Shown: piece by piece, positions 1-54,551 of the stretch
How positions within the stretch are numbered: the stretch's first letter is position 1
Layout: every line of letters begins with the position of its first letter
Assembly (NCBI GenBank): GCA_002269645.1
Contig: NIVC01004215.1
Span: forward strand, 1 to 54,551
Reading direction: 5' to 3'
Origin: Macrostomum lignano
Taxonomy: Eukaryota
DNA: 54,551 bases
Program-made: the position numbers and the translations under genes
Notes under the pieces: generated by a model
Database searches by the model: none
The model's input: the letters and a program-made list of their open reading frames with translations, nothing else
Told to the model about the DNA's origin: nothing

Positions 1-821
1 CAGTGTTCTGCACAGCAAAGTTGCCCACAGCAAAGAAACTCCAATTTTAGACTATACGAAGTTTCACTGCCACGAAGTCCCAGAACAAACTTATTTTGTT
101 ACCCTTTTGCTTTGCCCATCATAGTATAATATCAAACTTGTGGGTGTAATCCCGTGCATTGACAACTTTAGTGATTTTGCTTAAATCATTTTGAATCCGC
201 AGAAGATTAAAGGAATAAACAAAAACATTTTACAGCCTTAAAAGATTGCTTTTAAAACGTATCTTAATTCTAAACACAGATTCTACACAGTAGTCAACGT
301 AGACGTTCAATGCTAACACACGATCAGGGAATCAAACGAATCCTCTTGCTAACCCAATTCTCCATAGTAAGAGAGTTGTTACTTTTTAATTTTTTCTTCT
401 TAATTAAACTTCAGCTGCTAATTAAAAAATCATAACCATACATCAAAGCTTAAAACCACGTCAACTGTGTTATCGTAGTATAACAAAACGCAATGACGCG
501 AGGTATTAGTTGACAAAGAAGATTTTTGCCCTCAGCATATTTTGGCCCCGCTCGCAGCTGTAAGAATACCGGTGAATTTTTACTAACCAGCTTTACAGCA
601 AGTCAACAAGTCAACGTAGGAGTATTTCTCATGCATTGACTTTCTTTTTAGACATTCTTTAGAGACACTAAAAACTGTAAATAAGTACCACTGATATGTG
701 ACATTTAGTACCTACATCACTAACTTCATTCGATGTTTCTCCACCCAAAGTAGGTCTCTTGCTGCTAAACTTTATTAGTTAAAGCCAGCACACAAAACAA
801 CCAACTGAACTGAATCCACAG

Positions 822-1229
822 ACAAGCTGAGCTTCAACACGTGCTTCCAGACCTCGACGGGATGGAACGGAGTCTGCAAGCGAGCCATGGATGGAAACAA
901 AAACCAGGATTACGGCAAGCACTCCTGCACCCACACTAAAGCCCCTGGCGGATTCTGGCAAGGAAGCTTTACCAGACCCGCTCACATCAAGGAGGTCGTC
1001 ATCTACAACAGGCTCGACTGTTGCTCCAACCTACTCAACAACTTCGACATCATCGTGGACGGACAGGTGTGCGCCAGACACAGGTCCAGCACGTTCTTCT
1101 CAGTGAAGAGATTCAAGTGCGACAAGGTCGGTCAGAATGTCATCATCAGGACAAATCTGAAGAAGTACCTCACTCTGTGCGAGGTCGAAGTGTTCGGAGA
1201 GTACACCAAGCTGGCCGCTAAGAGATCTG
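822..1229 (+). CDS. F-type lectin domain exon A1 (intact, 408 nt)
   Basis: Acceptor CCACAG|AC; reads KLSFNTCFQTSTGWNGVCKRAMDGNKNQDYGKHSCTHT...NRLDCCSNLL...LTLCEVEVFG; donor G|GTGAGT at 1230. Confidence 0.88.
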
Positions 1230-4200: not shown

Positions 4201-7200
4201 ATGCCGATGCATTTCGTCACCCAATGGACATCCTCAGGGCTTACTAAATTTATTAAACGAAATTAAATTTTGCTCTAATACATAGACTTGAACAATCAAC
4301 TATTTGACAGGAGTAAAAATTAAGTGCATAACAGGGTAACACTAGTTTGGGTGAAAGGCGTGGTACAAATCAAAATAGTCCAGTCTGGTTATTGAGCGAG
4401 CTAAAAAATGTTGAAGCTGACGGCTAGCACCGCCCCCATGGCAAGCTGATGGTTCAGAGTAGGTTGTTGGGCCTTGATGTGCATAGCCTCTAATAAGCTA
4501 AGTTTGTTATCGTTCTTACAAAATTCAATAGTCTCACGTCAATATATAAGAGAAGAGGGGGCCGTAGCCCTGCGGTCTAGCGCAGGCTCTCGTGTGCCAG
4601 CGACCCAGGCTCGATTCCAAGTGCAGTCAAATTAATTTGGGGCTGAATTGGAATCTCGGCTTGGCTCTGCTCGTGCAATTAACGGCCTTGAGGGCCAACC
4701 CCCCAATGCGCAGTGAAGTGTACATGCCTAACGATAAAATAAAGTTAGGGCCGCTGTACACTCCTGTGTGGGTGTGTGCCTGCGTAGGTATCCGCGCGCT
4801 TGTGTGCCTGCTCAGGGGAGTCGGCGGAATGGGTGGTAATGCCTCTCGCCGGTTGTGTGTCTGTGCCGCTTAAAGTGCGCCAGGGTGCACACAACCCCCT
4901 GCCTCTAATAAAAAAAACAATATATAAGAGCGAAATTTCATTTCCTTTAATACATTTGGTAAGCCCTGACGATATCCATTATGGCAGTATGCATCGGCAT
5001 TAAAACATGTTGATTATCTCCTCCATTTATTTACTGTTTATTAAGCGAGCTTCATTACCAACCAACTGAACTGAATCCACAGACAAGCTGAGCTTCAACA
5101 CGTGCTTCCAGACCTCGACGGGATGGAACGGAGTCTGCAAGCGAGCCATGGATGGAAACAAAAACCAGGATTACGGCAAGCACTCCTGCACCCACACTAA
5201 AGCCCCTGGCGGATTCTGGCAAGGAAGCTAAGCTTTACCAGACCCGCTCACATCAAGGAGGTCGTCATCTACAACAGACTCGACTGTTGCTCCAACCGAC
5301 TCAACAACTTCGACATCATCGTGGACGGACAGGTGTGCGCCAGACACAGGTCCAGCACGTTCTTCTCGGTGAAGAGATTCAAGTGCGACAAGGTCGGTCA
5401 GAATGTCATCATCAGGAACAATCTGAAGAAGTACCTCACTCTGTGCGAGGTCGAAGTGTTCGGAGAGTACACCAAGCTGGCGCTAAGAGATCTGGTGAGT
5501 GGGAAATAATTATTGCGTGATACATTTCAGTAGAGAGTATTATGAGTGGTTACTGACCCAACTGCAGATATGCTGCCTCTGAGCCATTGCTCTCAGAGCT
5601 CTGTCGGCTGGAACGGCGTCTGCAGCAGAGCCATCGATGGAAACACCAACCAGTACTACTGGGGACACTCGTGCACTCACACGAAGCTGGAGAGCGGCTG
5701 GTGGATGGCCAAGACTCAGAAGCTGGCTCACATCAAGGAGATCAAGATCTTCAACAGACTCGACTGCTGTTCTAATCGACTCACAAACTTTGTGGTCACG
5801 GTGGACGGTCACGTGTGCGGCTCGTACAACTCTCGCGGTGTCTTCAAGGTGAAAACGTTCAGGTGTAATAAAGTCGGCAAGGTCGTGATGATCAGAAGTC
5901 GCAAGAGGACTTACCTGACTCTATGCGAAGTTCAGGTTTTCGGATTGTACACAAAGAGATCCACAGGCAGTAAGTTGATAAGTCTTTCTTTTTCGTTTTA
6001 CTAAAATGGACCAATCTAAATTTTCAGGTATATAATCACGTTTAACCTGATAGTTTTAAAAGGATGTCCATAGTTATCTGATGCCACATGTTGAAGGTGC
6101 CGACGGTGTTGTGGTGATGATGGAATGCTCGAGAGACCAGCTGAGGGTGTCCAGAAGTTGAGGTTTGCTCACTGTCGAGGCATGATCGGCGAAACTCGTG
6201 AAATTTGTATCAGGGTGTTCATAGTCACCTGGTGCCACCTGTTAATGGTCTAGAAGCTCCGTCTCGGTGAAGGCCAGTGACTAACGAAGTCAGAGCTGAT
6301 GCAGACACATGTGATCAACGTACTGATGAAAGTTGGAGTCTTGGCAAGGCTGCGCTGAGGCACAGTGCTGATTGGCGTACAGGGGTATACTGAATAATAC
6401 ATTAGCGCTTATGGAAAAAATTAAATCTTCTGGCAGAATCGTCGAATATCTCGACGGTCCGGAGGGCTGGCGATTTGATTTTTGTTTCAAAAGGTGCGCA
6501 ACAAAAAGTTAGCCGGTGTTTTTGAATTTCGTGTGCCTGCGTTGCTTCGTTCCGGCGCAGCAAGAAATTGTCGGGGGGGGGGGGAAGCAGTCAAAGTGTA
6601 ACATTGCAAACAGGTAAAGATGACGCAGTTAGTGACCATCATTTGGAATGCATTCTTTCAACATTGGAAGGCACTTTCGTCAAATTTGCACGCCATACTT
6701 CACCAAGGCAACTTCTTCTTGCCAGCGCCCACAACGCTGCGGCTGCAGCTGGGGGTAGGCGCCTAGAGGCGCCCTAGGGCACGCAGAATTTTGATGACCG
6801 CCACCGGATGGGCAAGCAGGTCATCCCGAACATCCGGGTCCAGCTGGCCCCTGACGCGATCGGCGCGGGGGCACTCGTGCAGAAGATGATCCTCGTTGTC
6901 CACGGCCACGCAATCGCGGCAGGGAGGGTCGGTTTCAATGCCGATTCGGTGGCGAGTGGCTGCAGCCAGCATGGAAGCTCCGGCCCGCAGCTGGTTCACA
7001 GCGACCGCCTCGGTGCGAGTCAGGTTGGTCGGAAGGGGTGGCCAGGGATCGGTCGCAAAGAATTTCCGATCTTTGGTGCGGCGGTCCCGCTTGATCGCCG
7101 CTTTGGCCGCTTGGAAGGTAATGGGAGCCGCAGTAGCGCCGTTGAGGTTTACCGCTCTGTTGGCCGCCCTGTCGGGGACTTCATTGCCGGAGATACAGCA

Positions 7201-11845: not shown

Positions 11846-11959
11846 TTATGCCATTAGTAAAGAATCATATGGAAGTTGTGATATCATCAATGTAACTAAG
11901 TTGTGCTTTCACAGTAGGAATACCGAGAATTCTTTTGCAAGAAAGTCAGAACTGATGCA

Positions 11960-12145
11960 GACAGGTGTGGTAGGAGGTGCTGATTAGCGCAAAGGAGTGT
12001 ATTAAATACACCTATAGAGCTTACGGGAAAAATCAGACCTTCTGGCAGAATTGTTGAACATCTCGACTTGATTTTTGGTTTAGAAGGTGCGCAAATAAAA
12101 ATACAGCCCCGTGTTTCTGAATTTCCTGTGCCAGCGTTGCTTTTG
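11960..12145 (-). mobile_element. Older diverged fragment of the 6080/53823 repeat family
   Basis: GTGCTGATTAGCGCA, CCTTCTGGCAGAATTGTTGAACATCTCGAC and AAGGTGCGCA motifs are shared with 6365-6540. Confidence 0.6.
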
Positions 12146-12729
12146 TAGTTCTACTATTAAAATACTATTAAATAAATACAATATAGCCAGTATGTTTATA
12201 GTGACACAAATAATATATTATATAATAAAGATTTTGTCCTGTCATGGATTAACTTTGTATTTATTTCGGAAGACCAAACAACAACCAGAGATAACACAAA
12301 GTACTTAAATACAATAGAAAAATAGCATTGAAGATTTATTATCAGTATTCATCATAAATCCTAGACCATTAAGTGCTGTGTCATTAAAATTTCAGCTGTG
12401 AATATTATGTCTAGATATATTAGGGTTCAACCCATAGAAATAAAGGAAGAAAATTCTAACAAACAATTATACCAGGCACAGGGCACAACAATAAAAACAT
12501 GGGAGATTCAAACCACCAAAAAAGTCGAAGCAATTTAAACTTTAAAGAAATAATAGATAATGAATTCAAAGCAAATTGCATACTGTAAATCTCGCTAGTT
12601 AAAAGTCACTCATTATCAAGCCAAAAAATCTGACAAAATTTGTTAGAAAAAAACTTCAATTGATATTTTCAAAGTTTATTCTTTCTATAATTACTTTGTT
12701 CACTGGGGTGACGTGTCATACTTGTCGAA

Positions 12730-16300: not shown

Positions 16301-18222
16301 GCAGGCACTCATTTTAGCGCCGCAGGCACTCATTTTAGTGCCGCAGGCACTCATTTTAGCGCCGCAGGCACTCATTTTAGCGCCGCAGGCACTCATTTTA
16401 GTGCCGCAGACACTCATTTTAGCGCCGCAGGCACTCATTTTAGCGCCGCAGGTACTCATTTTGGCGCCGCAGGCACTCATTTTAGCGCCGCAGACACTCA
16501 TTTTAGCGCCGCAGGCACTCATTTTAGCGCCGCAGCCACTCATTTTAGCGCCACAGGCACTCATTTTAGCGCCGCAGCCACTCATTTTAGCGCCACAGGC
16601 ACTCATTTTAGCGCCACAGGCACTCATTTTAGCGCCACAGGCACTCATTTGTTGTCGCCCTAAAGCAAAATATTGATTTCGCTAACAGGTCAACAAAGGT
16701 GGGGACTAACCCGGATATCCGGCCAACACTTGGGCCAGCAGCAGAGTGTAGGCGCCGCCAGAAGAAGGCGGAGGAAAAGTTCTAATGGTAAAATTGCGGT
16801 AGTGCCCAACCAGAGCGGTTCGCTCCTGCACTTTGTAGCCGGTCAGATCCGCCTGGGCCAGAAAGCCGCCATTGTCAGACGAAGTGGACAGCAGCTGGGC
16901 GGACAGACTGCCGCTGTACATTGCATTGGCGCCTTGGTCCCGTAGAAATTTCAAAGCGCCAGCAAGCTCAGGCATGGTGATCAGGGTGCCAGTTGGCTTG
17001 GGAGCTCCGCTAGGTGTCAGGTACACGCGCTTTAACAAAGGATTGCCGGCTAAACGGGCCGCATTGTTCGCCACTAATAGGTGAACATCGGCCGGCATGT
17101 GAAAGCCGCTTGTTGCCAGGCGAATCGCCGGAGCAAATAGGCTGGACCATTTCAGCCGGCCGAACCGCCTTGATGGGGGAAAGAAGAGGGCTAATAAATA
17201 CGGCGTTGACAGACGAGCGGCATAGCAACCAGACTAGAAACACCATAGCAACCAGACTAGAAACACCATAGCAACCAGACTAGAAACACTATAGCAACCA
17301 GACTAGAAACACAATAGCAACCAGACTAGAAACACCATAGCAACCAGACTAGAAACACCATAGCAACCAGACTAGAAACACCATAGCAACCAGACTAGAA
17401 ACACCATAGCAACCAGAATAGAAACACCATTGCAACCAGACTAGAAACACCATAGCAACCAGACTAGAAACACCATAGCAACCAGACTAGAAACACCATA
17501 GCAACCAGAATAGAAACACCATTGCAACCAGACTAGAAACACCATAGCAACGACATAGAAACAGCATAGCAAGTGGCGAAACACCATAAAACCCACATAG
17601 CAACGGCATAGTAACAACAAAAAACTCACTTATGCGCCACCTCTAAACCGCGCGCAAAGCCGGGCACGCCAGCACCAAGCGCAGATTTCAACGCTCTGGA
17701 CTCGCCGCCAGCCGCTGCAAACGATTTCGCGGTGACGGTGGCTGGCGCAGTTTCTAAGAAATCAAACAAAGTAGTCTTGTCCGCCCGATGACTGTGCACC
17801 AGCATGAGGCCTCCGCCGCCCAGACCAGTGATTGGATATTGTATAACGGCATTGCATAGAGCGGCGGCAACAGCTGCATCAACAGCGCTACCACCGTTGG
17901 TGAGCATCTCAAGGCCGCATTTTCCCGATTCGGTTGTGTCGGCGGCCACCGCGCCAAGTCGTTGAACTTGCGGCTCGCCGAATATTATGGTCAGAATGAG
18001 AGCCAAGGTCACTGCGGCGCTGAATATCACAGAGACTAATACGATTAGTGTCATGCCGCGCGGCGGGGGGCAGCGCAATTTTCGTTGCAATGGAGACGAG
18101 CTGGCCGGCTTGTCTGCTGACGACGGCTCATCAGCGCCGATAGCGGCAGCGCCTGCGGCGTTGTTCGGATCGGCGCCTTCGTCGGTCTGGTTCACCAGAT
18201 TTGTTTTGTCACCTTCGCTCAT
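13372..18222 (-). CDS. Gamma-glutamyltranspeptidase / glutathione hydrolase, GGT7-like (~650 aa); exons 18222-17630, 17168-16711, 15593-15035, 13714-13372
   Basis: N-terminal acidic tail + TM anchor; GAVAAD...GLEML..GGSAVDAAVAAALC, GLGGGG.MLV, DF.ETAP, GVPG..RGL..AHKRFGRL.W..LFAPAIRLA..GF, GILLNN, GRRP...MSP, RCG..FAFGA. Exon phases (2,1,2) join into one 1953-nt ORF. Confidence 0.9.
13810..14960. repeat. 27-bp G-rich minisatellite (GAGTAGGATTATCAGGGAGGGGATCTT)n in GGT intron 3
   Basis: About 40 tandem units with recurring variants. Confidence 0.95.
15795..16648. repeat. 21-bp minisatellite (GCGCCGCAGGCACTCATTTTA)n in GGT intron 2
   Basis: About 40 units; produces the artefactual MSACGAK/APQALIL ORFs. 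Confidence 0.95.
17221..17620. repeat. 23-bp minisatellite (CATAGCAACCAGACTAGAAACAC)n in GGT intron 1
   Basis: Tandem units decaying toward the exon-1 donor. Confidence 0.95.
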
Positions 18223-18284
18223 GCTTGCGGGCTGGCGATTGGCTGAAGTGCGCATGCATAAAAACGGTCAGATTCTTATTGAGG

Positions 18285-19015
18285 TTGCTGAGTCTGATTC
18301 TAAAGGTGCTGAGGCCGATTCTAAAGGTGCTGAGTCCGATTCTAAAGGTGCTGAGTCCGATTCTAAAGGTGCTGAGGCCGATTCTAAAGGTGCTGAGGCC
18401 GATTCTAAAGGTGCTGAGTCCGATTCTAAAGGTGCTGAGTCTGATTCTAAAGGTGCTGAGGCCGATTCTAAAGGTGCTGAGTCCGATTCTAAAGGTGCTG
18501 AGTCTGATTCTAAAGGTGCTGAGTCTGATTCTAAAGGTGCTGAGTCTGATTCTAAAGGTGCTGAGTCCGATTCTAAAGGTGCTGAGTCCGATTCTAAAGG
18601 TGCTGAGGCCGATTCTAAAGGTGCTGAGGCCGATTCTAAAGGTGCTGAGGCCGATTCTAAAGGTGCTGAGGCCGATTCTAAAGGTGCTGAGTCCGATTCT
18701 AAAGGTGCTGAGTCCGATTCTAAAGGTGCTGAGTCTGATTCTAAAGGTGCTGAGTCTGATTCTAAAGGTGCTGAGTCCGATTCTAAAGGTGCTGAGTCCG
18801 ATTCTAAAGGTGCTGAGGCCGATTCTAAAGGTGCTGAGGCCGATTCTAAAGGTGCTGAGGCCGATTCTAAAGGTGCTGAGGCCGATTCTAAAGGTGCTGA
18901 GTCCGATTCTAAAGGTGCTGAGTCTGATTCTAAAGGTGCTGAGGCCGATTCTAAAGGTGCTGAGTCCGATTCTAAAGGTGCTGAGTCTGATTCTAAAGGT
19001 GCTGAGTCTGATTCT
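18285..19015. repeat. 21-bp minisatellite (GCTGAGTCCGATTCTAAAGGT)n upstream of the GGT ATG (probable 5'UTR intron)
   Basis: 35 units by the ORF translation; minus-strand acceptor CACTTCAG at ~18243-18250 lies just before the ATG. Confidence 0.92.
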
Positions 19016-19019
19016 TAAA

Positions 19020-19135
19020 GAGATTTGAATCTGATTCTCAATGAGATTTGACTCTGATTCTCAATGAGATTTGACTATGATTTTAATTGAGATTTGAGCC
19101 AGATTCTCAATGAGATTTGACTCCAGATTCTCAAT
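19020..19135. repeat. 23-bp short array (GAGATTTGACTCTGATTCTCAAT)n
   Basis: About 5 units adjoining the 21-bp array and sharing the CTGATTCT core. Confidence 0.8.
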
Positions 19136-22602: not shown

Positions 22603-25600
22603 CTAATCAATCTTGTGAGCGTCAATACTGCCTTCAGCTAGCAGTTTACTGTAGCCGGGCAGGGAGTCTGTAGACTCAGTCGGATGAAGCCCGTTTTGCA
22701 CCGGCTTAACAGACTCACCAGAGCCTCTCAGCTGCTTCTTAGTCGCCTTACTGTGATAATCTTTTCTTAGAAAGTCATTCTTTAACAAGATGATAAACAG
22801 GCCGGGGTTAATCATATTCATGATGAACATGGATCCGGTCAGCGTGTAAAAGTACACCGAGTCAACCCGGTGACCTTCAACAATCATGCCGTAGGTGATT
22901 CTACCCAGGCCGAAGCCGCGACAAAATAAGAATGTGACCAGATTAACTAGCGCGTTGGCCCGATAAATTGGACTGCTGAATTTGAACTGTTGCATTTGCA
23001 TGAGTTTGCGCGAGTGCAAGAAAAACGAATTAATCTCGGCCATGAGTGCTACGACATTGTAGGCGACGCATCTTCTTGTGGTCAGATTGTAGAAGAACAT
23101 TGACGTTACCTGCAAATTTGTAATATCAGTATGAGTAACAGATTAGCTAGAGAAAGTTGGGACTAATATGGATTAGCAGAAGGGTGGGCGAAAGGAGCAA
23201 GATTGGAATGAAAAACTGAGTGAGAAGTGAGAATAGAGCAGAGTTAGACCTAGAATAAAGAAGAGTTAGAGTTAGGGCGAGTAGAGTGAGAGTGGAGTGA
23301 GAGTAAACAGAGTGGGAGTAGAGCGAGAGTAGAGAGTAGAGTGAGAGTGGAGTGAGAGTAAACAGAGTGGGAGTAGAGCGAGAGTAGAGAGTAGAGTGAG
23401 AGTGGAGTGAGAGTAAACAGAGTAAGAGTAAATTGAGAAGAGAGCAGAGTTAGAGCAGACGGAGTGAGATTGAGAGGAGTGGAGTAAGAAGTAAACCGAG
23501 GTCTCTGTTGTCAGAGGGCACTGACAAAAGTACAAATCAATTAGTCTACATTGGAAACGCATCGTTTAAACCGAAACAAAAATAAAACAGGTAAATCATA
23601 ACGAACTGTTCAACTTTAAAATAAGTGTTGCAAGCATGTCATTTTCTGATACATGAATTACCAAAATACGTTACCTTAAGCAGTTAAATTTTAACTTTTA
23701 TTCTAAAAATTGCGAACAAATTTTTAGGAAAGAAATTTAACTAGGATCGATTATAAATTCTTCTATAATTTCGCCTATATTGGCCTTCAAATGTTCCCAT
23801 TCTCTTCTTAATGCTATGCCATGAATGCTTCTATTAATAGGAACGCATATGTGGGTTTGCTAAGTAGTGCTTGGCCCAGAGCATTTCATTCGCAAGCCAA
23901 CCCTACTAAGGCTCATAAATTGTCTGATACGGTCGGGTAGGAGAAGATAAGTGAAGGCAGAGTAAGGACGCTTGCCAGTGTATAAACCATTTCTAAGGTC
24001 CAGTTGTGCAAGACACGAGTTCTATAGCGTGTGCCAGCTTGGCAGAAAAAAAAGTCCACGTAGGAGAAAACGCATTACAGAAAGAAAAACACTGTTCATT
24101 ACTGCGTGGGTATAGTTGATTTCTCTTCTCGTTTACACTTCTCTTGAACTTTTTGGTGAGCACGTTCTTTCTCTCTCCCTCTCTCTCTCAAGCGAACTCA
24201 GTTTTATTATAGTAGCAGTGGGGTAGTCCAGTACTCTACCCATAAGCACTGCCCCTCTTACAGAAGCCAAGAGTGCACCATAAGAGTTGGGCGCGCGGTG
24301 GTGCGACTGCAGTTTGAACCGATATCTACGAGTAGTTCTACAGAGTTTTATACTTGTTGTCAATGGTTTTACTTAGTGTTGAACTTTGAACAAGCTTTAC
24401 AGATACAGACAAGCAGACACGCCATCGTGTGTTGTGTTTGATTTGTTAGAAAAATCTACCAATGAACACTATCAAATCGACGCCTCTCTATCCGGGCCCT
24501 CGGGACCTTTGAAAGTTCACAATAGCAATCCAGACCGCTCAGTATTTTAGTCTCTTCTCAGCTCTCTTCTCACGATCCCTTCTCATCTACTCACTCATTC
24601 TTCTTAGCTGTAGTGACGATTGATTTTACGACTATCAGATGAAGCAATTGAGGTAATTCAGCAAAATAATAATTGGTGCATAGCAGCTACCGCTGTGTGT
24701 ATGTGCCAATAAAGACAAAGGTTTAACTAATCCAGCTTGCAAGCTTATCTAAAATAGAGTAAAAATAGTAAATGCTAAAATTAATTGTAACTTTTAACAA
24801 CACTTACCGCAATATGGTGCAACGTTAATTGCCACATTTCCAATACTTTCTTTTGAACAATTAGGTCGCCAAAGTCGTACATGAAGTAGCCTTTAGTGGG
24901 TGGAGAGTAAAGTGCCAGGGATTAGTATGATTTTACACAGCAGCAACAAACTGTGGATATTCTGTGTTGATGAAGATCAGATCAGATTCTGGGAAGTTCT
25001 TAAATATTTTGAAATTAAATGAAGTTTTGGACCTAATGAAGTTTGGATAAAGTGAAAGATTCAAAATTGAGATAGAGCACACCCAGAAATAGAAACAAAA
25101 TGCAAAGATTATATCTTACCTGTGGACACAGCCACCATATAATAGGTGAATGGTGTGATGTGAGTGATGAGATCTTGCCAAATCTCGGGGTAGTAGTAAA
25201 AACTACAAATTGAATTTGAATTTGTATAGAATTAGGTTTTTTTAATAAAATAGTTTTAAAGGAATCAAATATTTTATTAATTGTTACAAAACTTGTAGAC
25301 ATGGGGTCTGTATGCAAGATGGTATACTAAAAACAAATTTGTTAAATAACTAGGGAGTGGCATTACTGACCATTCCATTAACTCCACTGAGCAGCAATAC
25401 CAAGTGCACATACATACACAGTTATATACATAGACACAGGAATGTTATTGGTCTAACTTTATTTATTGTTAGGCAATACATACTTCACCTTGCCTAGGAG
25501 GCTAGGCCCTGAAGGATCTTAATTTCACAATAGACCCAAGCAAAGATTTCAATTTAGTGGCAAATTAATGTGACTACATGTAGAATCAAGTCCATTTAGA

Positions 25601-28600
25601 AGATTTTGTATTTACAAGAACTTTTTTACAACAAAATTAACTAATGCTAATGCTATTTTTTTATTATCTTACTAGACTGTTTCATCTGTCAGATATTAGA
25701 TATAGATCAAGTTAGGAAAAATATAAATATAGACTAATTTTATTTAAAATAAATTTAAAATATTATATTCATTATATACATTTAAGAATTTAGAGGGGCA
25801 TGAGTCAAAGGGTTAGACAGTTATAGAAACTCCAACAGCTTAGAAATCATCTAAGCAGCTTAACAATCATCTATTGAGTTGAGTTATGAATACCTTGATA
25901 TTAAAATGGTAATTACCTAGGACTGACTAGTAATGGGTCCAAGAGAATTGCCCACTGAGGTTTGACTATAATTCCTTTTTCCTGTGGTGCATTTGGCATG
26001 ATAGAGCAAAGCCATTTTTCCCATTTGTTGGCCAATATTAGATTATAGATCTAGATAAAAAATGACTAAATTAATAAATTGGACCTTGGAAGCAGAAATT
26101 AGGACTACTTTAAGGTAGGACCAATTATAAGTTCACATTCATTAGACTTGTATTTTTAAGCTTTATAAGTAACAAGGTAGCTAAAATGCACTAGACTTAT
26201 ACAATACTTATATTTGTTAAAATGTACAAATAGTTAAAATGTATTGCCAGTTTTAGGATTGTGTACCAGTGTACACCAGAATGAAATTTGTTTATATAGT
26301 TCCTATATGCCAATGAATTTATATCACAGAAAAATACACTAAGGCAAAAAAGTACTAACTATATTTTAATCTTATTTTTTATCTCTGCAAAAAAACAAAA
26401 AAATTGGTCATCTTTTACTAAAATTATAAAGAACTAGTTAATTTTTTATCTTAGAAAAGTTATAAACACCATGAATTTTAATTTATTTTTTCATTATTTT
26501 TTAGAAAATATTCTTATTCAGTTTTTGATTAAAATTTTGCTTTTCCAACTATAAATATAAAAATTATGCTTAACTTAAACTTGGTCATTTTTTGTATATT
26601 AATTAAGTACATTGGTTGGGACTTGGAACTTTGTCCCACTTATTGTCTCAGCAATCTCTAAATGTCAAGCTATATGCCAAAAGGGCATGTTAGGCTCTTT
26701 TATATGCCAAGTTGAATATCAATGGTGTATTATAAGTCCTATATGCTAGACTTTTTTGGCATATATATACTACCCAAAGTCTAGATATAATGGACTAATA
26801 CAATAATATACATTGTTAAATTAACAACATATAGAATTATATTGCCATAGTTAGATCAGAACTTTTGGACCACTACTGAATGATAAGCTTAACTCTTACA
26901 AAACAATTAAGAAATTTTATTTTTTAAATTCAAATGTAGCAACCATTTAGTAGATCTAGTATATTGAAGGCAATAAGTGAAATAAATTTGAATATATTTA
27001 AAAAATTAACAAATAATAGTTTAAAATATTTGGACAATTATCCATTTGAGTATTATCTTTTTAGGTATTGTCTTCTTGACTATCATACTTTTAATGAATC
27101 AGCTACTTTTTTATCAGTTCCTTATGCTATGATCCTGACTAACCTAAGGCTAGGACTAATAAATAGTCTTAAAAATGTATCTTGGCATTATAGAATATAT
27201 TTACTTCAGTTAATAAATATATTATAAAAGCTGTTAAGCTATTAAAAAACATGAATAATACATGCTAAGATAAGTTGCAAAAATTCCTATTAGAAAAACA
27301 TAGACATAGTACTAATTGGATTATGAGGCATTTAGCTTTAATAATATTATATAGCTATACTTAGTCTTGCCATTTATAAAAAATACATTAATTTTTGCTT
27401 AGAATTCTTATATAAGTAAGTTCTATTTTTATTCTTAGTCAAAAAATTAAGTTCTATAGTCAATGTATATCAGAGGGGTTACACATAGTGATAATAGAAT
27501 TTTGCAAGTTTCTAAAACTGAATCCAAATGTACAAAAAATCCCAAATCTGAATATCTAGACTTATCACTAGTTGCACATATATTCTTTGCCTTTTTAACC
27601 TTAATTTTAGCATTAAATATTATAATAGAAAATAAAAAAACTCAATTAACAAATTGTTTGCAAATGTTGAAATACTAAATCAATAGTAGATCTAGAGTTT
27701 CATTTAGGAGGAAAGGGGGCAATCCAAGTTTAGGATGCCAACATGAGTATAAAAGGTGCCAATTTTTAAGCTATGGATGCAAAAGTCCATAAAAAGGACA
27801 AAAAATCAAGCTTAGGGATGCAAAAAAGCATTTAGAGGCAAAGAATCAAGCTTAGAGGCATAAAAATGTATTTAGAGGTAAAAAAATCAAGTTTAGGAGG
27901 CATAAACTTAGGTTTTTTGGAGCCATAAAGTTCTGTCAAGCTTTTTAGGAAGGATGGCCACTTCTTTTGCCATATTTTAGATCATATAATATATGCCTAA
28001 AAATTTGGGCATGCATTGCCTTATAAGCCAAAAGTAGGCATGGATATTTAGTGTGTATTACCAATATGTACGCATACTTAGTGTGTTTTTCATACATGCG
28101 CAACTTCTGAAATTACGCTGGCCGTGCGACTTAGTTTTCGATAAAAAATGCGACTTACCTATGAAAGAGCCAAGCAAAAACTTTAGGTAAACGGCAGGAG
28201 TAACTATGACCATAATTTAAAGCTAATTGCCTCGCCAGCTAATTAGTGCTGCGTGCAGATTTCGCGTTTTTATAACAGCTAATCAGTATGTCATCTAGTG
28301 GCGGCATGAAGCAATTAGTAAATTGTCAGTACAGTGTAGTGAGCATACTACAAAAGTCATGATTCATGAATGTCCAGAAGTAAGTGAAGAGAATACAGTG
28401 TGACCTATAGCTCAAGAACGATTTGCTAGACGATTTGGCATGGAAGATGAGAGCCCTGATTCAGATGGCTCATCAGATGCAGAATACGAATCCAGTAGAG
28501 ATACAAGCTGTGAAAACCCACAGATTTTTAAACCACTGAATTCTAATTCCCGGAACTATTTTTGCATAGATTCTAAATTTGAAGTCATGCTCAAACAAAA

Positions 28601-31600
28601 ACTTGTTAACAGTTAGGAAAAAGGCAAAGATGGGAGTAATGCATGTTAAACTAAGATTTGAGGCCTTTGCAAATTCTCTCCATTCCTCAATCTTCTCATC
28701 CTCTTTTTCTTTTCTCTCTCATCCCTTATCCCTTCTCTCTTTCCTCTCCTCTCCTATCTCTTCTGTCTCCTCTCTACATTCTTATCTCTCCTCTCGTCTC
28801 TCTCCATTCCACTCTACTCTCTCATCTTATCTTCCCTCTCGTCTCTCTCCACTCTACTCTCTCATCTTATCTCTCCTCTCTTTTCTACTCTCTCATCTCT
28901 CCTCTCTTCACTCTCCTCTCATCTCCTCTTTATCCTCTCTTCTCTCATCTACTCTCTCCTCTTTCCTCTTTCCTCTCTTCTGATCTCATCCATCATCTTT
29001 TCTTTCCTCTTTCCTCTCATCTCCTCTTCTCTCTCATCTCTTTTTCCTCCCTCAGCTTTTCTCTCCTCTTCTATCTTTTCTCCCATCGCATCGCTCGCCT
29101 CTCCTCTGTTTGCTTATCTCTAATCTTCTATTCCCTCTACTTTGAAGTAAGAAAATATGCACATATTTTTGCTGAAGATAAGAGGAGAGAAGAGGGCATT
29201 GAGGAGAAAGGGTAGAGAGAAAGGGGGAGAAGAGAGGAGAGTAAAAATGAGACGAGAGAGAAGAGGGAAAAGGGGGAGAGAGAGAAGAGGGGAGGCAAGG
29301 TAGAGAAGAAGAGAGAGATGAGAGTTGAAGATACACCAACCTTGCTGGTTAGGAAGTTTCAAAGAACCCGAGGGGCGAGGGCCAGATAGAGGGGCTTCGC
29401 GAGCCGGAGTTTGCCAACCCCTGCTCCAGAGTTTAAGAAATCAATGGGAAACTGTTGACGCGGGCTTCTGATTTCAAAGATCTTGTCTGTGGTTGAAGAC
29501 TTCTATTCTGTTTTTGCTCTCTTGCCACACTTGCACCTACTACCCCTGATTGCCTCTGATTGTGACTTACTTCCCTCTTATTGCGACTTAGTTGCTTCTT
29601 TTTGCGACTTACCTAATCCTTTTTGCGACTTACCTAACCCTTTTGCGACTTACCTAATCCTTTTGCGACTTACCTAATCCTTTTGCGACTTAGCTGATCC
29701 TTTTGCGACTTACCTGATTCTTTTTGCGACTTACCTAATCCTTTTTGCGACTTACCTAATCCTTTTGCGACTTACCTAACCCTTTTGCGACTTACCTAAT
29801 CCTTTTGCGACTTACCTAACCCTTTTGCGACTTACCTAATCCTTTTGCGACTTACCTAATCCTTTTGCGACTTACCTAACCCTTTTGCGACTTACCTAAT
29901 CCTTTTGCGACTTACCTAACCCTTTTGCGACTTACCTAATCCTTTTGCGACTTACCTGATTCTTTTTGCGACTTACCTAATCCTTTTTGCGACTTACCTA
30001 ACCCTTTTGCGACTTACCTAATCCTTTTTGCGACTTACCTAATCCTTTTTGCGACTTACCTAATCCTTTTGCGACTTAGCTGATCCTTTTGCGACTTAGT
30101 TTGCTTCTTTTGCGACTTACCTGATCCTTTTTGCGACTTACCTGATTATTTTTACAACTTACCTGATCCTTTTTGCGACTTACCTAACCCTTTTGCGACT
30201 TACCTAATCCTTTTTGCGACTTACCTAATCCTTTTGCGACTTAGCTGATCCTTTTGCGACTTAGTTTGCTTCTTTTGCGACTTACCTGATTCTTTTTGCG
30301 ACTTACCTGATCCTTTTTGCGACTTACCTGATCCTTTTTGCGACTTACCTAACCCTTTTGCGACTTACCTAATCCTTTTTGCGACTTACCTAACCCTTTT
30401 GCGACTTACCTAATCCTTTTGCGACTTACCTAACCCTTTTGCGACTTACCTGATCCTTTTGCAACTTACCTAACCCTTTTGCGACTTACCTGATCCTTTT
30501 TGCGACTTAGTTTGCTTCTTTTGCGACTTAGTTTGCTTCTTTTGCGACTTACCTGATTCCTGTTGCGACTTACCTGATCCTTTTTGCGACTTAGTTTGCT
30601 TCTTTTGCGACTTACCTGATCCTTTTTGCGACTTACCTGATTATTTTTACAACTTAGTTTGCTTCTTTTGCGAATTGTTTTTCTTTTGCTTCACCATTTT
30701 CCCTGAACTGCTCTTTCTTTCGCTTTCCTCTTGCCTTTCTTGGTTCTTGTGTTTTTCTGTTTTTGGTTGACTCAATTTTGCAACTTACCCCTGGTCAGCC
30801 ACGATTTACGGTGGCCGGATCGGCCAGGTCGGCCAGCAGTTGCGCATGTATGGTGTTTTTTATAGAATTATGTGGAAGAATTAATGTTAAGTGGAAAAAT
30901 ATAAAAAAAATTATAGCCTAAAAGGGTCTATTATGCAATTAAAAGAATGATCATTTATTTTTGCAATATAAAAACGTCTTTTGTTATTGCAACATTAGTA
31001 TATTGCATAGATTTGAGAGTGGACATGCACTCAATTTGTGTGGGCATTTGTAATTATTCAATTTGTGCTTAAGTATGCACCTAGTAGAGCTGTCACGAGA
31101 TCTCGACGAGACAAGATTCGAGACAAGATCTCGACATTTTTTCTCGTCTCGAGAAATCTCGAATTTTGTCAAGAAATTCGAGACGAGATTCAAGAATTTT
31201 TCTGATACCTTTTTTCAAAAGCTTTTAAGTGATAAGATATAAAAAGGGGAGCAAATTTTCATATAAATACAACTGTTTGTTGTAACACGCTTGATAGGGC
31301 AATTTTCAAATGGTAAAATCTAGCCAATGTCGAGCAGTTATTTAACGAACGTCGTTATATACGAGTTTGCATCGCATATGCGCTCTTTTAGTTATCATTT
31401 CAGTTCTGCAGCAAGGTGTATCATAGCAGACTTGAAGACAATCTACACAGGTCTTTTGACAAATTAGTAATAGACATAGTAGGGCCAAGGGCCTATATGC
31501 TACAAGCATAAATTCTTATGAATAAATAGCAAAGAATTTAAACTAGAATTAATAAAGTATTCTAGAAAATCTAAAAAATAAATTTTAGAATTGTATCTTA

Positions 31601-33020
31601 TCAAGAAATTTAAGACAAGATAAGGCAAGATAAGAGCAAGACAAGATGCAATTCTAAAATATATTTTTTAGATTTACTTTGACGTCTTTGTCGTCTCGTC
31701 TTGAAATTCTTGACTTATAAGCCTTTCTCGTCTCGAATCTCGTCTCGAATAAAATCTCTAATTTTGACAGCTCTAGCACCTAGCATGATTTGGACTATGG
31801 TACTCTCATTTTCCTCTATGCTTGGGTACAATCTTGGGATTCATTTGGCTGTTTCTATTGGCAAAACATACACATGAGTCACTATTGGATAGAATAGTAG
31901 TCACGTGATTGCTCTTAGCCAATAGCAACTTAATATATGCCATAAGGACCTAGTCAGGATCATGGCACATCTGTAATAGAATGAATCCTATCAAAAAAGT
32001 TTGATTGCACCATGCACTGGAACAAATCTTATCAAAAAAATTTACTTGCGCCATGTACTGCAAATTTTGAAAAAAAAACACAAAAATCAGTAATTTTCTG
32101 TTTGAAAATATTAGTAAAACTTATATTTGAATCTGTTTCATAGAAAATGCAATGTTAACATAAATGAATTAAAAGGCTATCAATATATCAACAAACAAAA
32201 AGTGCTAATAACAAAAAATTATACATGCTTTTTTTTAGAGAAAATATGGTCTTGTTGGAAGTTTTTTTCCTGTACCAAATTGTGCCAATTTTTTTTGTGC
32301 CGTACTGTGCTAGATTTTTCTCTTTTGCCTCCTTTTGCACTAGAATGTGCCAGCACAGTGCATGTCCAATCCTTTTGTGCCAGAATTTTCCGTGAAAAAG
32401 GCCATTCCTGACTGTGTTGTGTATGTGTTGCCAATAGAAATGGCTAGATGATTCCCAAAGTTGTGCATACATGCTTCCCTCCAAAATCTATCCTTATACT
32501 AAAACTAAATACTATCTAGGACTGAATGACGATTTAGTTTAAATAAAATTACAATTGTTTATCTAATTAAAAAAATATACAAATCAGTTTTTATTAATTA
32601 TTGCCAATAAAATAAGAATCATTTCAAAAAATGAAATTTACTAATTTAGGCAAAAAATATTTTTTAGTCTCATATTCACATAGAAAAAAGAACATATTAT
32701 TAGGTAATTTCTATTAAATCAAAAAGAAATGCCTACTACTTGTTCTAAACTATTGTTAGAATAGAAACTTACCATAATATATCCCAGAGACCAACAATAA
32801 ATGCATGAATCCAGGACAACAAAAGATTTTTCCATTTCCAGGCTTCCTCTTCCTTATTTACTGCATGTTTAACGACAGCTACAGGAACTCCAATGTAACT
32901 AACGATGCGGTTAAGAATGTTGAAGAAAATGATAGTGCCAATCATAACACCATATCCTCCTTGTACTGACACAACATCAGTATTGTTAGGAAATACTGAA
33001 GTGATAGCATCGGTGACCAT
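22603..33020 (-). CDS. TLC-domain membrane protein, TLCD1/TLCD2-like (~306 aa); exons 33020-32773, 25202-25120, 24890-24808, 23109-22603
   Basis: WKWKNLLLSWIHA, YPEIWQDLI, VAVSTGYFMYDF.DL, W.L.LHHI, VALMAEINSFFLH.RKL, TF.FCR and KNDF match the TRAM/LAG1/CLN8 pattern. Phases 2,1,0 give a 921-nt ORF. Confidence 0.9.
23215..23490. repeat. GA/GAGTA-rich low-complexity tract in TLCD intron 3
   Basis: Repeating GAGTAGAGAGTAGAGTGAGAGTG blocks. Confidence 0.85.
25330..28030 (+). mobile_element. Heavily mutated hAT-like transposon remnant (CpG-free)
   Basis: Weak residual transposase-like words: NSYKTIKKF (RWNS-like), YPFEY, YLDLSLVAHIFF...LALNIIIENKKTQL (dimerisation-domain-like); subterminal AATCAAGCTTAG(A/G)GGCA repeats at 27800-27900. 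TIRs not identified. Confidence 0.45.
28186..28258 (+). other. ~70-bp 28S rRNA-like fragment (helix 69-71 region); not a functional rRNA gene
   Basis: GGTAAACGGCAGGAGTAACTATGAC...TGCCTCGCCAGCTAATTAGTG versus the eukaryotic LSU consensus GGTAAACGGCGGGAGTAACTATGAC...TGCCTCGTCATCTAATTAGTG (recalled, not searched). Confidence 0.65.
28680..29423 (-). mobile_element. CT-tract/GA-tract-containing element with one hAT/Charlie-like end
   Basis: End reads CAGGGGTTGGCAAACTCCGGCTCGCGA on the minus strand; ACCTTGCT...GGAAGTTTCA segment and GA tract are shared with 49060-49398. Confidence 0.55.
29565..30680. repeat. 20-21-bp minisatellite (TTTTGCGACTTACCTAATCC)n
   Basis: About 50 units inside the P-like element; the GCGACTTA motif also occurs near the left TIR (28126, 28150). 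Confidence 0.95.
31085..31775. mobile_element. Non-autonomous hAT element (MITE), 691 bp
   Basis: Perfect 11-bp TIR TAGAGCTGTCA/TGACAGCTCTA; 8-bp TSD GCACCTAG (31077-31084, 31776-31783); CGAGA subterminal motifs. Confidence 0.92.
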
Positions 33021-49059: not shown

Positions 49060-49398
49060 GGTCCAGATGAGAAAGGAACGGCGAGCGAAAAGAATATGAC
49101 AGATAAGAGAAGAGAAGAGGTGAGAGAACAGAGGGAAAAGCAGGAGGAGAGGAATGAAGACAAGAGAGAGAAGAGAGGGAGAGGAGAGAGGGGAGAGAAG
49201 AGGAGAGATTGAAGAGAGGGAAGAGCGATGAGAATGATAAGGGGATAGAGTAGAGAGAAAGAGAGCTTAGAAGCGACACAGACCTTGCTATGATGAAGTT
49301 TCCGGTCTTACTATGGCCGGATTGCTTTGGTGGAAGTTTCACAGTACCCAAGTTCCGGATAGAGATAGGCTTTGCGGCCCGCAAATGGCCGACCCCTG
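49060..49398 (-). mobile_element. GA-tract element with hAT/Charlie-like end
   Basis: Minus-strand end CAGGGGTCGGCCATTTGCGGGCCGC; related to 29180-29423. Confidence 0.5.
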
Positions 49399-53822: not shown

Positions 53823-54551
53823 CAGTAGGAATACCAAGCCATTTTTCCGCCCGTCGAACTACCAAGGGGGGGGGGGAAATTTACCCCCCCCCCTGACAAT
53901 TTTTTTTGCTGCGCCGGAACGGAGCAACGCAGACACACAAAATTCAAGAACACGGGCTAACTTTTTGTTGCGCACCTTCTCAAACAAGAATCAAGTCGCC
54001 AGCCCTCCGGACCGTCGAGATATTCGACGATTCTGCCAGAAGGTCGGATTTTTCCCATAAGCGCTAGTGTATTCAGTACACCCCTGTGCGCCAATCAGCA
54101 CTGCGCCTCAGCGCAGCCTTGCAATGCCTCCAAATTGCATCAGCACGTCGACCACATGTGTCTGCATCAGCTCTGACTTCGTTGGTCACTAGCCTTCACC
54201 CAGGCGGAGCTTCTAGACCTTCAACAGGTGGCACCAAGTGACTATGGACACTCTGATACGAATTTCTCGAGTTTCGCTGATCAAGCCTCGACAGTGGGCA
54301 TACCTCAACTGCTAGGTATCCTCAGCTAGTCTCTCGAGCCTTCCATCATCACCCCGACGCCGTCGGCACCTTCAACCGGACTTGCAGCCAGGTGACTATG
54401 ACACCTCGTGGCAAATTTTCTCTAGATGTTTTCGCTGATCAAGCCTTGCCAATGGGCAAGCCTCAACGCGGAACATCTTCAGCTAGTCTCTCAAGCATTC
54501 AGTCATCACCCCGACGCCGTCGGCACCTTCAACAGATGACACCAGGCGACT
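53823..54551. mobile_element. End of a DNA-transposon-like repeat (possibly piggyBac-like) with G/C hairpin and ~160-bp internal tandem units; runs off the window
   Basis: Starts after TTAA (53819-53822); G-run AAATTTA C-run hairpin at ~53866-53893; two copies of GTGACTATG...CGCTGATCAAGCCT...CATCACCCCGACGCCGTCGGCACCTTCAAC; inverted copy at 6080-6585. Confidence 0.55.

What the first reader, a model, noticed from the sequence alone, without database searches (positions are those of the whole stretch)
25188..28070. ~2.9-kb tract with zero CpG over a hAT remnant: targeted hypermutation of transposon DNA
Seen: a line-by-line scan found no CG between 25188 and 28070, while flanks and neighbouring TEs have many. 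My rough expectation at this base composition is several tens. The tract is rich in TA/TG/CA, and subterminal words (GGTGCCAA, GGATGCAAAA, GGCATAAA) look like eroded GGCGC motifs. Established: 5mC deamination turns CG into TG/CA; fungal RIP does similar repeat-targeted C>T. Inference: a sharply bounded, saturating, repeat-directed CpG mutation process in an animal intron, i.e. a RIP-like genome-defence footprint.
Basis: partly seen in the sequence, partly recalled or inferred. Interest (0 to 1): 0.78.

Follow-up and report, generated by a model that had tools for sequence, protein, structure and literature searches.

The report
CpG-free old intron DNA patch
A 2.9-kb stretch inside an intron of an intact invertebrate TLCD2-like gene has lost every CpG, most likely through long-term germline DNA methylation of old intron DNA that contains transposon relics, a known process, not through a new RIP-like defence.

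Summary
There is no CG between 25188 and 28070, against 55 expected, or 43 at the window's overall CpG observed/expected ratio (o/e). GpC occurs 85 times. Outside tandem arrays, the next longest CpG-free run is 365 bp.

The tract is not a recognisable hAT. It is the exon-proximal 2.9 kb of intron 1 of an intact four-exon TLCD2-like gene on the minus strand. Intron 2 is also CpG-free. All five CpGs between 24692 and 28070 lie in exons 2 and 3.

Two pieces of the tract have younger CpG-rich relatives in the window: a SINE-like retroposon and an inverted copy of the neighbouring element. Against these, the tract copies kept 0 of 26 CpGs and 12 of 45 GpCs. The changes comprise 81 transitions and 47 transversions and fall on both strands. 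Similarly diverged repeats elsewhere keep a third to most of their CpGs.

So the loss happened in place and is specific to CpG and to this patch. It sits on top of ordinary old-age, AT-biased decay. That fits 5mC deamination in methylated intronic DNA, as described for invertebrates. It does not fit RIP or APOBEC-type editing. Methylation itself could not be tested.

The parts
25188..28070 (.). CpG-free run as reported (2883 bp, GC 27.6%, 0 CpG against 55 expected, 85 GpC)
24692..28070 (.). Extended CpG-poor patch. Its 3213 bp of intronic DNA hold 0 CpG (62.7 expected). Its only 5 CpGs are in exons 2 and 3 (166 bp, 6.7 expected).
32773..33020 (-). TLCD2-like gene, exon 1 (starts at ATG; donor GTAAGT; 4 CpG)
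25120..25202 (-). TLCD2-like gene, exon 2 (acceptor TTGTAG, donor GTAAGA). It holds the CpG at 25186 (CCC|GAG, Pro-Glu). The first 15 bp of the reported tract are this exon.
24808..24890 (-). TLCD2-like gene, exon 3 (4 CpG, each with a synonymous escape route)
22603..23109 (-). TLCD2-like gene, exon 4 with stop codon (TLC domain; 26 CpG, o/e about 0.95). The spliced CDS is 921 nt, 306 aa, intact, and 54% identical to the Lineus longissimus TLCD2-like protein.
25297..25592 (-). Old, decayed copy of a SINE-like retroposon inside the tract. It is 68-71% identical to the young copy. GC is 37% against 56%, and 0 of 17 CpGs are kept.
4553..4917 (+). Young copy of the same SINE-like retroposon. It has an A-rich tail, 22 CpG and a perfect 13-bp target-site duplication CAATATATAAGAG at 4540-4552 and 4918-4930. 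It serves as the ancestral proxy.
27304..27487 (+). Decayed inverted relative of the sequence just outside the tract (28095-28254). It has no CpG.
   Evidence: (score 99; 200 shuffles gave mean 34, sd 3.2, max 46)
28095..28254 (-). CpG-containing arm (9 CpG) homologous to 27304-27487. It carries GCGACTTAC words like the neighbouring minisatellite.
28071..31746 (.). CpG-normal middle block of intron 1 (GC 40%, o/e 0.81). It includes the minisatellite (TTTTGCGACTTACCTAACCC)n at 29577-30656. Presumed younger inserted DNA; no TSD or TIR was found.
31747..32772 (.). Exon-1-proximal end of intron 1, also CpG-poor (GC 30%, 5 CpG, o/e 0.21)
24891..25119 (.). Intron 2 (229 bp, 0 CpG)
26304..26765 (.). 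Cluster of four exact TATATGCCAA words, one of them inverted. Possibly relics of a repeat-bearing element; unclassified.
27768..27906 (.). It is unrelated to the neighbouring 20-mer array.
11920..12200 (+). Control: an old repeat copy outside the patch. It is 84% identical to the consensus of two younger copies and keeps 4 of 7 CpGs and 8 of 10 GpCs.

Best explanation
The tract is old, effectively neutral intronic DNA. It forms the exon-2-proximal 2.9 kb of intron 1 of an intact TLCD2-like gene and includes transposon relics.

Two processes acted on it where it lies. The first is ordinary long-term, AT-biased decay, which lowered GC to about 28% and produced many transversions and indels. The second is a CpG-specific hypermutability strong enough to keep the CpG count at zero. 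The most likely cause of the second is stable germline CpG methylation of this intronic patch, followed by 5-methylcytosine deamination (CpG to TpG/CpA, then often TpA).

The embedded exons keep CpGs. Either selection holds their sequence, or methylation in such genomes favours intronic repeat-derived DNA over exons.

The sharp right edge is the junction with a CpG-normal, GC-richer block (28071-31746). That block is probably younger inserted DNA, or lies outside the methylated patch.

Shown here: the CpG loss, its direction, its restriction to this patch, the mutation spectrum and the gene context. Inferred: methylation as the cause, and the relative ages of the blocks.
For: 1. The deficit is specific to CpG: 0 CpG against 85 GpC, and only CG-containing words are missing.

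2. The loss is directional and occurred in place. Against younger relatives in the same window, the tract copies kept 0 of 26 CpGs. Their fates were CA 9, TG 6, TA 4 and other 7. They kept 12 of 45 GpCs (Fisher p=0.003).

3. The tract is old rather than hit by a burst. There are 81 transitions to 47 transversions, plus indels. C>T (43) and G>A (32) are interspersed on the same strand.

4. The effect is specific to this patch.
- An old repeat copy outside the patch keeps 4 of 7 CpGs (Fisher p=0.0009 against 0 of 26).
- Four other repeat pairs at 71-77% identity keep 33-83% of their CpGs and show no comparable GC drop (8 points at most, against 17-19).
- Unique DNA elsewhere has o/e 0.92.
- AT-rich segments elsewhere keep o/e 0.8-1.1.

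5. A rough steady-state estimate, using rates taken from those alignments, gives P(0 CpG) of 3-31%. This holds if CpG transitions run 10-30 times faster than other C>T changes, which I recall as roughly the range reported for methylated CpGs. With no such excess, the probability is about 1e-10.

6. The other AT-rich, exon-adjacent intron pieces of the same gene are also depleted. Intron 2 has 0 CpG in 229 bp, and the exon-1 end of intron 1 has o/e 0.21.

7. In cnidarians, intronic transposons are methylated above exons, and transposons appear to be targeted independently of gene-body methylation (PMC8857917, read).
Against: 1. Methylation was not and cannot be measured here. The species is unknown, so the presence of DNMT1/3 is unknown.

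2. The gene's exons are not CpG-depleted: CDS o/e is 0.82 and exon 4 is 0.95. All five exonic CpGs in the patch have a synonymous escape route. This is not classical gene-body methylation, and these CpGs are not obviously hypermutable.

3. The 20-bp minisatellite 1.5 kb to the right of the tract shows no CpG hypermutability among its units: 2/102 at CpG sites against 0.14 at other C/G sites. If methylation is present, it does not extend there.

4. Other transposon copies in the window, both young and old, are not depleted. Why this particular patch would be methylated is unexplained.

5. Polarity rests on one young copy per family. No outside copies could be retrieved.

6. The controls are small (7 polarised CpGs).

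7. In cnidarians, methylation is reported to fall as transposons age (PMC8857917).
Confidence: 0.6

Rival explanations
1. Classical gene-body methylation of the 5' part of the TLCD2-like transcription unit. The whole region from exon 1 to exon 3 is methylated in the germline. Old native intron DNA has decayed to zero CpG, and the CpG-normal blocks are simply recent insertions.
For: Five of the six longest CpG-free runs in unique DNA of the window lie in or just downstream of this gene. Depleted pieces adjoin exons 1, 2 and 3, and exon 1 has o/e 0.46. The promoter side is normal at o/e 1.0.
Against: CDS o/e is 0.82. Exons 2+3 hold 5 CpG against 6.7 expected, and exon 4 is 0.95. The minisatellite within intron 1 shows no CpG hypermutability. 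No TSD or TIR was found to prove that 28071-31746 is an insertion.
Confidence: 0.2
2. The tract arrived already CpG-depleted. It could be a segment moved from a heavily methylated compartment, or a transposon family whose active copies lack CpG, for example after horizontal transfer from a CpG-poor genome.
For: About 2 kb of the tract (25650-27300 and 27490-28070) has no relative in the window, so its ancestral CpG content is unknown. The right boundary is a step.
Against: Two embedded pieces demonstrably lost 26 CpGs relative to resident families. Intron 2, on the far side of exon 2, is also CpG-free. No TIR, TSD or protein domain defines an element.
Confidence: 0.08
3. A RIP-like or deaminase-based (APOBEC/AID-like) hypermutation aimed at repeated DNA.
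For: CpG loss is saturating with a sharp right edge. GC-to-AT changes strongly outnumber AT-to-GC changes: 38% against 5% per site in the SINE-like copy. C>T at CpA runs at 0.38, above CpC and CpT at about 0.2. TpA/ApT is 1.06.
Against: Transitions to transversions are only 1.7, and there are many indels. The second copy of the SINE-like repeat is intact with 22 CpGs. (CpA+TpG)/(ApC+GpT) is 1.26, so it is not depleted. There is no 5' TpC or other preference: NpC rates are 0.25-0.37. C>T and G>A are mixed on one strand. The affected zone includes non-repeat intron DNA and surrounds intact exons. Other repeats are unaffected.
Confidence: 0.05
4. Chance or composition: an AT-rich stretch, or the decayed remains of a minisatellite whose unit never contained CG.
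For: Several arrays in the window have CG-free units and give CpG-free gaps of up to 1120 bp, for example 13839-14959.
Against: P(0) is 1e-19 or less. There is no hidden periodicity. Compressibility matches shuffled sequence. Explicit loss of 26 CpGs is seen. Other AT-rich segments keep normal CpG.
Confidence: 0.02

Closest known systems
CpG decay by 5-methylcytosine deamination in germline-methylated DNA of mosaically methylated invertebrate genomes, especially preferential methylation of intronic transposons (Ying et al. 2022, PMC8857917)
   Same: - A CpG-specific deficit with normal GpC.
- TG, CA and TA as the products.
- Location in the intron of an expressed-type gene.
- DNA containing transposon relics.
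- Exons less affected than intronic repeat DNA.
- A background genome that is mostly not depleted.
   Different: - Depletion is complete: 0 CpG in 3.2 kb of non-coding DNA.
- It is confined to one patch, while other transposon copies in the same 54 kb are not depleted.
- The paper reports the highest methylation on young transposons, whereas this DNA is old.
- Methylation was not measured here, and the species, which looks spiralian, is unidentified.
Gene-body methylation footprints (low CpG o/e genes) in invertebrates; from my own knowledge, e.g. the Ciona, honeybee and oyster literature
   Same: Depletion lies within a transcription unit. The promoter side is CpG-normal. Boundaries can be sharp.
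   Different: The coding sequence of this gene is not depleted (o/e 0.82), and intron 3 and exon 4 are normal. The gene would be classed as 'high CpG o/e'.
Fungal repeat-induced point mutation (RIP) and the CpG-biased 'RIP-like' hypermutation of basidiomycete transposons (e.g. Microbotryum, PMC5381629)
   Same: Heavy C:G to T:A change in transposon-derived DNA, an AT-rich outcome, and sharp edges.
   Different: There are many transversions and indels. The partner repeat is untouched. CpA is not depleted. Host intron DNA is included. The genome is animal, where no RID-type system is known.

Membership tests
Methylation-driven CpG decay (5mC deamination) domain | CpG deficit without a matching GpC deficit | tested here: met
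   0 CpG against 85 GpC in 2883 bp. Only CG-containing 3- and 4-mers are missing.
Methylation-driven CpG decay (5mC deamination) domain | Ancestral CpGs replaced mainly by TpG/CpA (later TpA) in polarised comparisons | tested here: met
   Of 26 ancestral CpGs, 9 became CA, 6 TG, 4 TA and 7 something else; none was kept.
Methylation-driven CpG decay (5mC deamination) domain | CpG loss exceeds loss at other G/C dinucleotides and exceeds CpG loss in unmethylated DNA of the same genome | tested here: met
   0/26 CpG against 12/45 GpC kept (p=0.003). 0/26 against 4/7 in the control copy (p=0.0009). Control pairs keep 33-83%.
Methylation-driven CpG decay (5mC deamination) domain | 5-methylcytosine present at the locus in the germline, and DNMT1/DNMT3 present in the genome | not testable with these tools
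   Only sequence is available, and the species was not identified.
Classical invertebrate gene-body methylation | Exons of the methylated gene are CpG-depleted (low CpG o/e class) | tested here: not met
   CDS o/e 0.82. Exons 2+3 hold 5 CpG against 6.7 expected. Exon 4 o/e is 0.95.
RIP / RIP-like repeat-induced hypermutation | All copies of a repeat are mutated, and mutation tracks repeat boundaries | tested here: not met
   The young SINE-like copy has 22 CpGs and a perfect TSD. The patch spans unrelated relics, unique intron DNA and two exons.
RIP / RIP-like repeat-induced hypermutation | Almost exclusively C:G>T:A transitions | tested here: not met
   81 transitions and 47 transversions, plus indels.
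RIP / RIP-like repeat-induced hypermutation | RIP indices: TpA/ApT above about 0.89 and (CpA+TpG)/(ApC+GpT) below about 1.03 | tested here: not met
   The indices are 1.06 and 1.26. The second fails, and many ordinary window segments give similar values.
RIP / RIP-like repeat-induced hypermutation | RID/Masc1-type cytosine methyltransferase homologue acting premeiotically | not testable with these tools
   The genome is not available.
hAT DNA transposon | hAT transposase remnants (BED finger, DDE/RNase-H-like core, hAT dimerisation domain) | tested here: not met
   Pfam scan of all six frames of 24500-28700 with stops masked. Nothing at E<=1 apart from one irrelevant 0.12 hit.
hAT DNA transposon | Short terminal inverted repeats flanked by an 8-bp target-site duplication | tested here: inconclusive
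   No bracketing TIR pair above chance. After about 30-40% decay, such signals could be erased.
APOBEC/AID-type DNA editing | Strand-coordinated C>T or G>A clusters with a 5' neighbour preference | tested here: not met
   C>T 43 and G>A 32 are intermixed on one strand. Rates by 5' neighbour are 0.25-0.37 with no TpC excess.
SINE (for the repeat used as a clock) | Short non-coding retroposon with an A-rich 3' tail and a target-site duplication | tested here: met
   365 bp, tail TAATAAAAAAAA, 13-bp perfect TSD.
SINE (for the repeat used as a clock) | Pol III (tRNA/5S/7SL-derived) head | tested here: inconclusive
   A box-B-like GGCTCGATTCC is visible by eye, but ARAGORN and Rfam found no tRNA.

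The most novel reading that the evidence does not exclude
In a spiralian-like genome that is otherwise barely CpG-depleted (o/e 0.92 in unique DNA), a mechanism singles out a few kilobases of old intronic DNA that contains transposon relics. It drives CpG there to extinction while sparing embedded exons and neighbouring repeats. That would mean either a sequence- or small-RNA-guided methylation island maintained for a very long time, or a CpG-directed mutator that does not depend on methylation.
Probability: 0.1. Interest if true: 0.65.

Novelty: new member of a known kind. Interest (0 to 1): 0.3.

Why it matters
As it stands, this is a clean, unusually complete example of a methylation-type mutational footprint, with sequences in the same window serving as clocks and controls.

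It shows how one short window can separate 'old and AT-biased' from 'CpG-hypermutable'. It also warns against reading CpG-free tracts as RIP.

If bisulfite or nanopore data confirmed a sharply bounded methylated island that covers intron relics but not the exons between them, the locus would add to the still unsettled question of whether invertebrate DNA methylation is aimed at gene bodies or at transposons.

Tried and rejected
1. Species identification failed.
- A GGT exon query at E<=1e-10 returned nothing (the threshold was too strict).
- Exact look-ups of two window ORFs found nothing.
- The fucolectin exon hit only Mnemiopsis (38%) and Branchiostoma (36%).
- The TLC exon points to spiralians: Lineus 60%, bivalves about 50%. 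The species itself is not in the database.

2. Outside copies of the SINE-like family. Two metagenome pattern scans gave 0 hits each, and the fetched Mnemiopsis and Branchiostoma loci contain no copy. Polarity therefore rests on copies within the window.

3. Orthologue test. The scallop TLCD2-like locus has its longest CpG-free gap (1093 bp) at the equivalent place: the end of intron 1, exon 2 and intron 2. That gap is a CG-free 59-bp minisatellite (GpC is also near 0), so I do not count it as support. The Lineus locus is depleted throughout (o/e 0.49) and tells us nothing.

4. I tested whether the decayed 20/40-bp repeat at 27768-27906 is an inverted relic of the neighbouring (TTTTGCGACTTACCTAACCC)n array. 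The score was no better than shuffles, so I rejected the idea.

5. Hidden periodicity, meaning the tract as an eroded CG-free satellite: rejected.

6. A transition-tolerant Smith-Waterman scan of the tract against the rest of the window found only two homologous blocks.

7. A search for a TSD or TIR around the CpG-normal block 28071-31746 found none.

8. tRNA origin of the SINE-like head was not confirmed.

9. I used CpG hypermutability within minisatellite arrays as a local proxy for methylation. It was negative for the array in intron 1 and positive for two arrays in the GGT gene. Array homogenisation makes this a weak clock.

Full report
**1. The observation**

CG occurs at 25186 and at 28071 and nowhere between them, a gap of 2885 bp.

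- The tract has 375 C and 421 G in 2883 bp. That gives 54.8 CpG expected under independence and about 43 at the window-wide o/e of 0.79.
- The Poisson probability of zero is 1e-19 to 1e-24. The lowest count in 5000 shuffles was 31.
- Only CG-containing words are missing. GpC occurs 85 times (o/e 1.55), and non-CG palindromes are at or above expectation.
- The tract is not low-complexity and has no hidden periodicity.

Tandem arrays cover 26.5% of the window. Several have CG-free units and produce CpG-free gaps of their own. With arrays and the patch masked, the remaining 36.9 kb has CpG o/e 0.92, and its longest CpG-free run is 365 bp.

The right edge is a step. There are 0 CpG of 5.0 expected in 27801-28000 and 8 of 7.5 expected in 28001-28200. 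The left edge is softer.

**2. What the tract is**

Six-frame translations of 24500-28700, with stops masked, match no Pfam family at E<=1. That includes hAT and every other transposase or reverse transcriptase. No terminal inverted repeats bracket the tract. The hAT label is therefore unsupported.

The tract is intronic. Homologues of an ORF with a TLC domain map colinearly to four minus-strand exons. The exons are 32773-33020, 25120-25202, 24808-24890 and 22603-23109. All three introns have canonical GT-AG borders.

The exons splice into an intact 306-aa protein that is 54% identical to the TLCD2-like protein of the nemertean Lineus longissimus. The best named hits are spiralians (nemertean, bivalves). 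The source species itself is not in the protein database.

So 25203-28070 is the exon-2-proximal 2.9 kb of the 7.6-kb intron 1.

Intron 2 (229 bp) is also CpG-free. Between 24692 and 28070 there are 3213 bp of non-coding DNA with 0 CpG (62.7 expected). The 166 bp of exons 2 and 3 hold 5 CpG (6.7 expected).

**3. Clocks within the window**

Two parts of the tract have relatives elsewhere in the window.

*(a) The SINE-like retroposon.* 25297-25592 is a minus-oriented copy of a 365-bp SINE-like retroposon. A young copy sits at 4553-4917 with an A-rich tail, a perfect 13-bp target-site duplication and 22 CpGs.

*(b) The inverted relative of the right flank.* 27304-27487 is an inverted, decayed relative of 28095-28254, which lies just outside the tract. 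The transition-tolerant alignment scored 99, against a mean of 34, sd 3.2 and maximum 46 in 200 shuffles.

I took the CpG-rich copies as ancestral proxies and used a symmetric scoring scheme. The results:

| Measure | Result in the tract copies |
|---|---|
| CpGs kept | 0 of 26 (fates: CA 9, TG 6, TA 4, other 7) |
| GpCs kept | 12 of 45 |
| Transitions : transversions | 81 : 47, plus several indels |
| C>T and G>A on the same strand | 43 and 32, intermixed |
| C>T rate by 3' neighbour | CpG 0.54, CpA 0.38, CpC 0.23, CpT 0.18 |
| C>T rate by 5' neighbour | 0.25-0.37, no preference |

GC fell from 56% to 37% in the first pair and from 38% to 21% in the second.

**4. Controls**

A different repeat family has two close copies (88% identical) and one older copy at 11920-12200. 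Against the agreement of the two younger copies, the older copy is 84% identical. It keeps 4 of 7 CpGs and 8 of 10 GpCs. Its GC>AT changes are 19% and its AT>GC changes 7%.

Four other repeat pairs at 71-77% identity keep 33-83% of each other's CpGs. Their GC contents differ by 8 points at most, against 17-19 points in the tract pairs.

The tract's 0 of 26 differs from the polarised control (p=0.0009) and from its own GpCs (p=0.003). AT-rich segments elsewhere in the window (10-11 kb, 19-20 kb, 33-34 kb) have o/e 0.8-1.1.

CpG hypermutability is therefore a property of this patch. It is not a general property of old or AT-rich DNA in this genome.

**5. Mechanism**

The transversion load (about 10%) and the indels show that the tract copies are old. 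The divergence is not a burst of transitions.

On top of that decay sits a CpG-specific excess. I made a rough steady-state estimate using the tract's own TpG/CpA counts and the per-site rates from the alignments.

- Mutation should create of the order of 10-20 new CpGs per elapsed period.
- To hold the count near zero, CpG transitions must run about 10-30 times faster than other C>T changes. That gives P(0) of 3-31%.
- With no excess, about 23 CpGs are expected.

From my own knowledge, a 10-30-fold excess is roughly the range reported for methylated CpGs. It therefore needs no exotic process.

The layout of the gene fits a mosaic:

| Segment | GC | CpG o/e |
|---|---|---|
| Intron 1, exon-2-proximal (the tract) | 28% | 0.00 |
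| Intron 2 | 34% | 0.00 |
| Intron 1, exon-1 end | 30% | 0.21 |
| Intron 1, middle block (28071-31746) | 40% | 0.81 |
| Intron 3 | 40% | 0.66 |
| Upstream of exon 1 | 38% | 1.00 |
| Spliced CDS | 43% | 0.82 |

The AT-rich intron DNA next to the exons is depleted. The GC-richer blocks are normal.

The coding sequence is not depleted, so this is not classical gene-body methylation. It resembles what has been reported for cnidarians. There, intronic transposons are methylated above exons and appear to be targeted independently (PMC8857917).

I could not show that the CpG-normal blocks are insertions. The minisatellite in intron 1 shows no CpG hypermutability among its units. So the extent of any methylated domain, and why it sits here, remain inferred.

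**6. Rivals**

- **RIP-like or deaminase editing** fails on several tested features. The ratio of transitions to transversions is only 1.7. The partner repeat is untouched. CpA/TpG is not depleted (index 1.26). There is no strand coordination and no 5' context preference. Unique host DNA and intact exons lie inside the zone.
- **Import of already depleted DNA** cannot be excluded for the roughly 2 kb with no relatives. It does not explain the 26 documented CpG losses or the CpG-free intron 2.
- **Chance, composition and an eroded CG-free satellite** are excluded.

A modest excess of C>T at CpA (25/65 against 23/113 at CpC plus CpT) is unexplained. It is based on small numbers.

**7. Verdict**

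Its reading as a new RIP-like defence in an animal is not supported.

The best-supported account is decay of old intronic DNA carrying transposon relics by germline methylation and deamination. That is a known kind of footprint, seen here in an unusually complete and sharply bounded form. Direct methylation data would settle it.

Noticed in passing
window 4540-4930: A young SINE-like retroposon (365 bp, GC 56%, 22 CpG) with an A-rich tail and a perfect 13-bp target-site duplication CAATATATAAGAG. It sits between duplicated fucolectin-type exons. A box-B-like GGCTCGATTCC is visible, but ARAGORN and Rfam call no tRNA.
   Followed up: partly
window 685-9828: Three tandem copies, about 95% identical (685-1760, 5057-6032, 8426-9420), of a unit encoding two F5/8-type-C (fucolectin-like) exons, followed by a WSC-like ORF at 9523-9828. 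The nearest database proteins are only 36-38% identical (Mnemiopsis, Branchiostoma).
   Followed up: partly
window-wide (29 merged arrays, 14.5 kb): Tandem arrays cover 26.5% of the window. Most are 18-45-bp minisatellites of 10-50 units, plus four 4-6-bp microsatellites; many sit inside introns. Several give long spurious ORFs, for example 17987-19018 and 34987-36768.
   Followed up: partly
window 15800-16650 and 18286-19020: Minisatellites in or beside the gamma-glutamyltranspeptidase gene (exon-bearing ORFs 14989-15747 and 17629-18255, minus strand) show more unit-to-unit transitions at CpG sites (6% and 14%) than at other C/G sites (2% and 0%). The GGT ORFs themselves have CpG o/e about 1.2. 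The array next to the tract shows no such excess.
   Followed up: no
window 26304-26765: Four exact copies of TATATGCCAA, one inverted, lie within 460 bp of the tract. Two one-mismatch copies lie at 27990-28031. About 0.01 exact copies would be expected by chance in the tract. This may be a relic of a repeat-bearing element or of binding sites.
   Followed up: partly
window 25297-25592 and 27304-27487 against their relatives: Outside CpG, C>T is about twice as frequent at CpA (25/65) as at CpC or CpT (23/113). This could reflect context-dependent mutation, non-CpG methylation or noise.
   Followed up: no
window 28694-29070 and 29175-29333; also 23279-23455: A TC-rich low-complexity tract is followed 100-250 bp later by its GA-rich inverted complement (about 70% complementary, 150 bp), which could form a hairpin. 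A GA-rich tract lies on the other side of the patch in intron 3, and a similar GA-rich tract lies at 49101-49234.
   Followed up: no
L004 8290-9030 (Argopecten irradians TLCD2-like locus): About twelve tandem 59-bp copies of the intron-1/exon-2 junction, each carrying the TTTCAG acceptor and the first exon-2 codons, lie immediately upstream of the real exon 2. This is a minisatellite of duplicated splice acceptors, and it produces a 1093-bp gap with almost no CpG or GpC.
   Followed up: partly
window 2446-3400 and 6763-7353: CpG-rich retroelement fragments lie between the fucolectin units. The ORF at 6766-7353 gives a sub-threshold RNase H match (E about 1e-3, 19.8 bits against a cut-off of 25.8). 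The ORF at 2446-2814 only looks like reverse transcriptase by eye and was not scanned. A repeat at 6090-6586 recurs at 53881-54376 (88%) and 11977-12142 (71%).
   Followed up: partly
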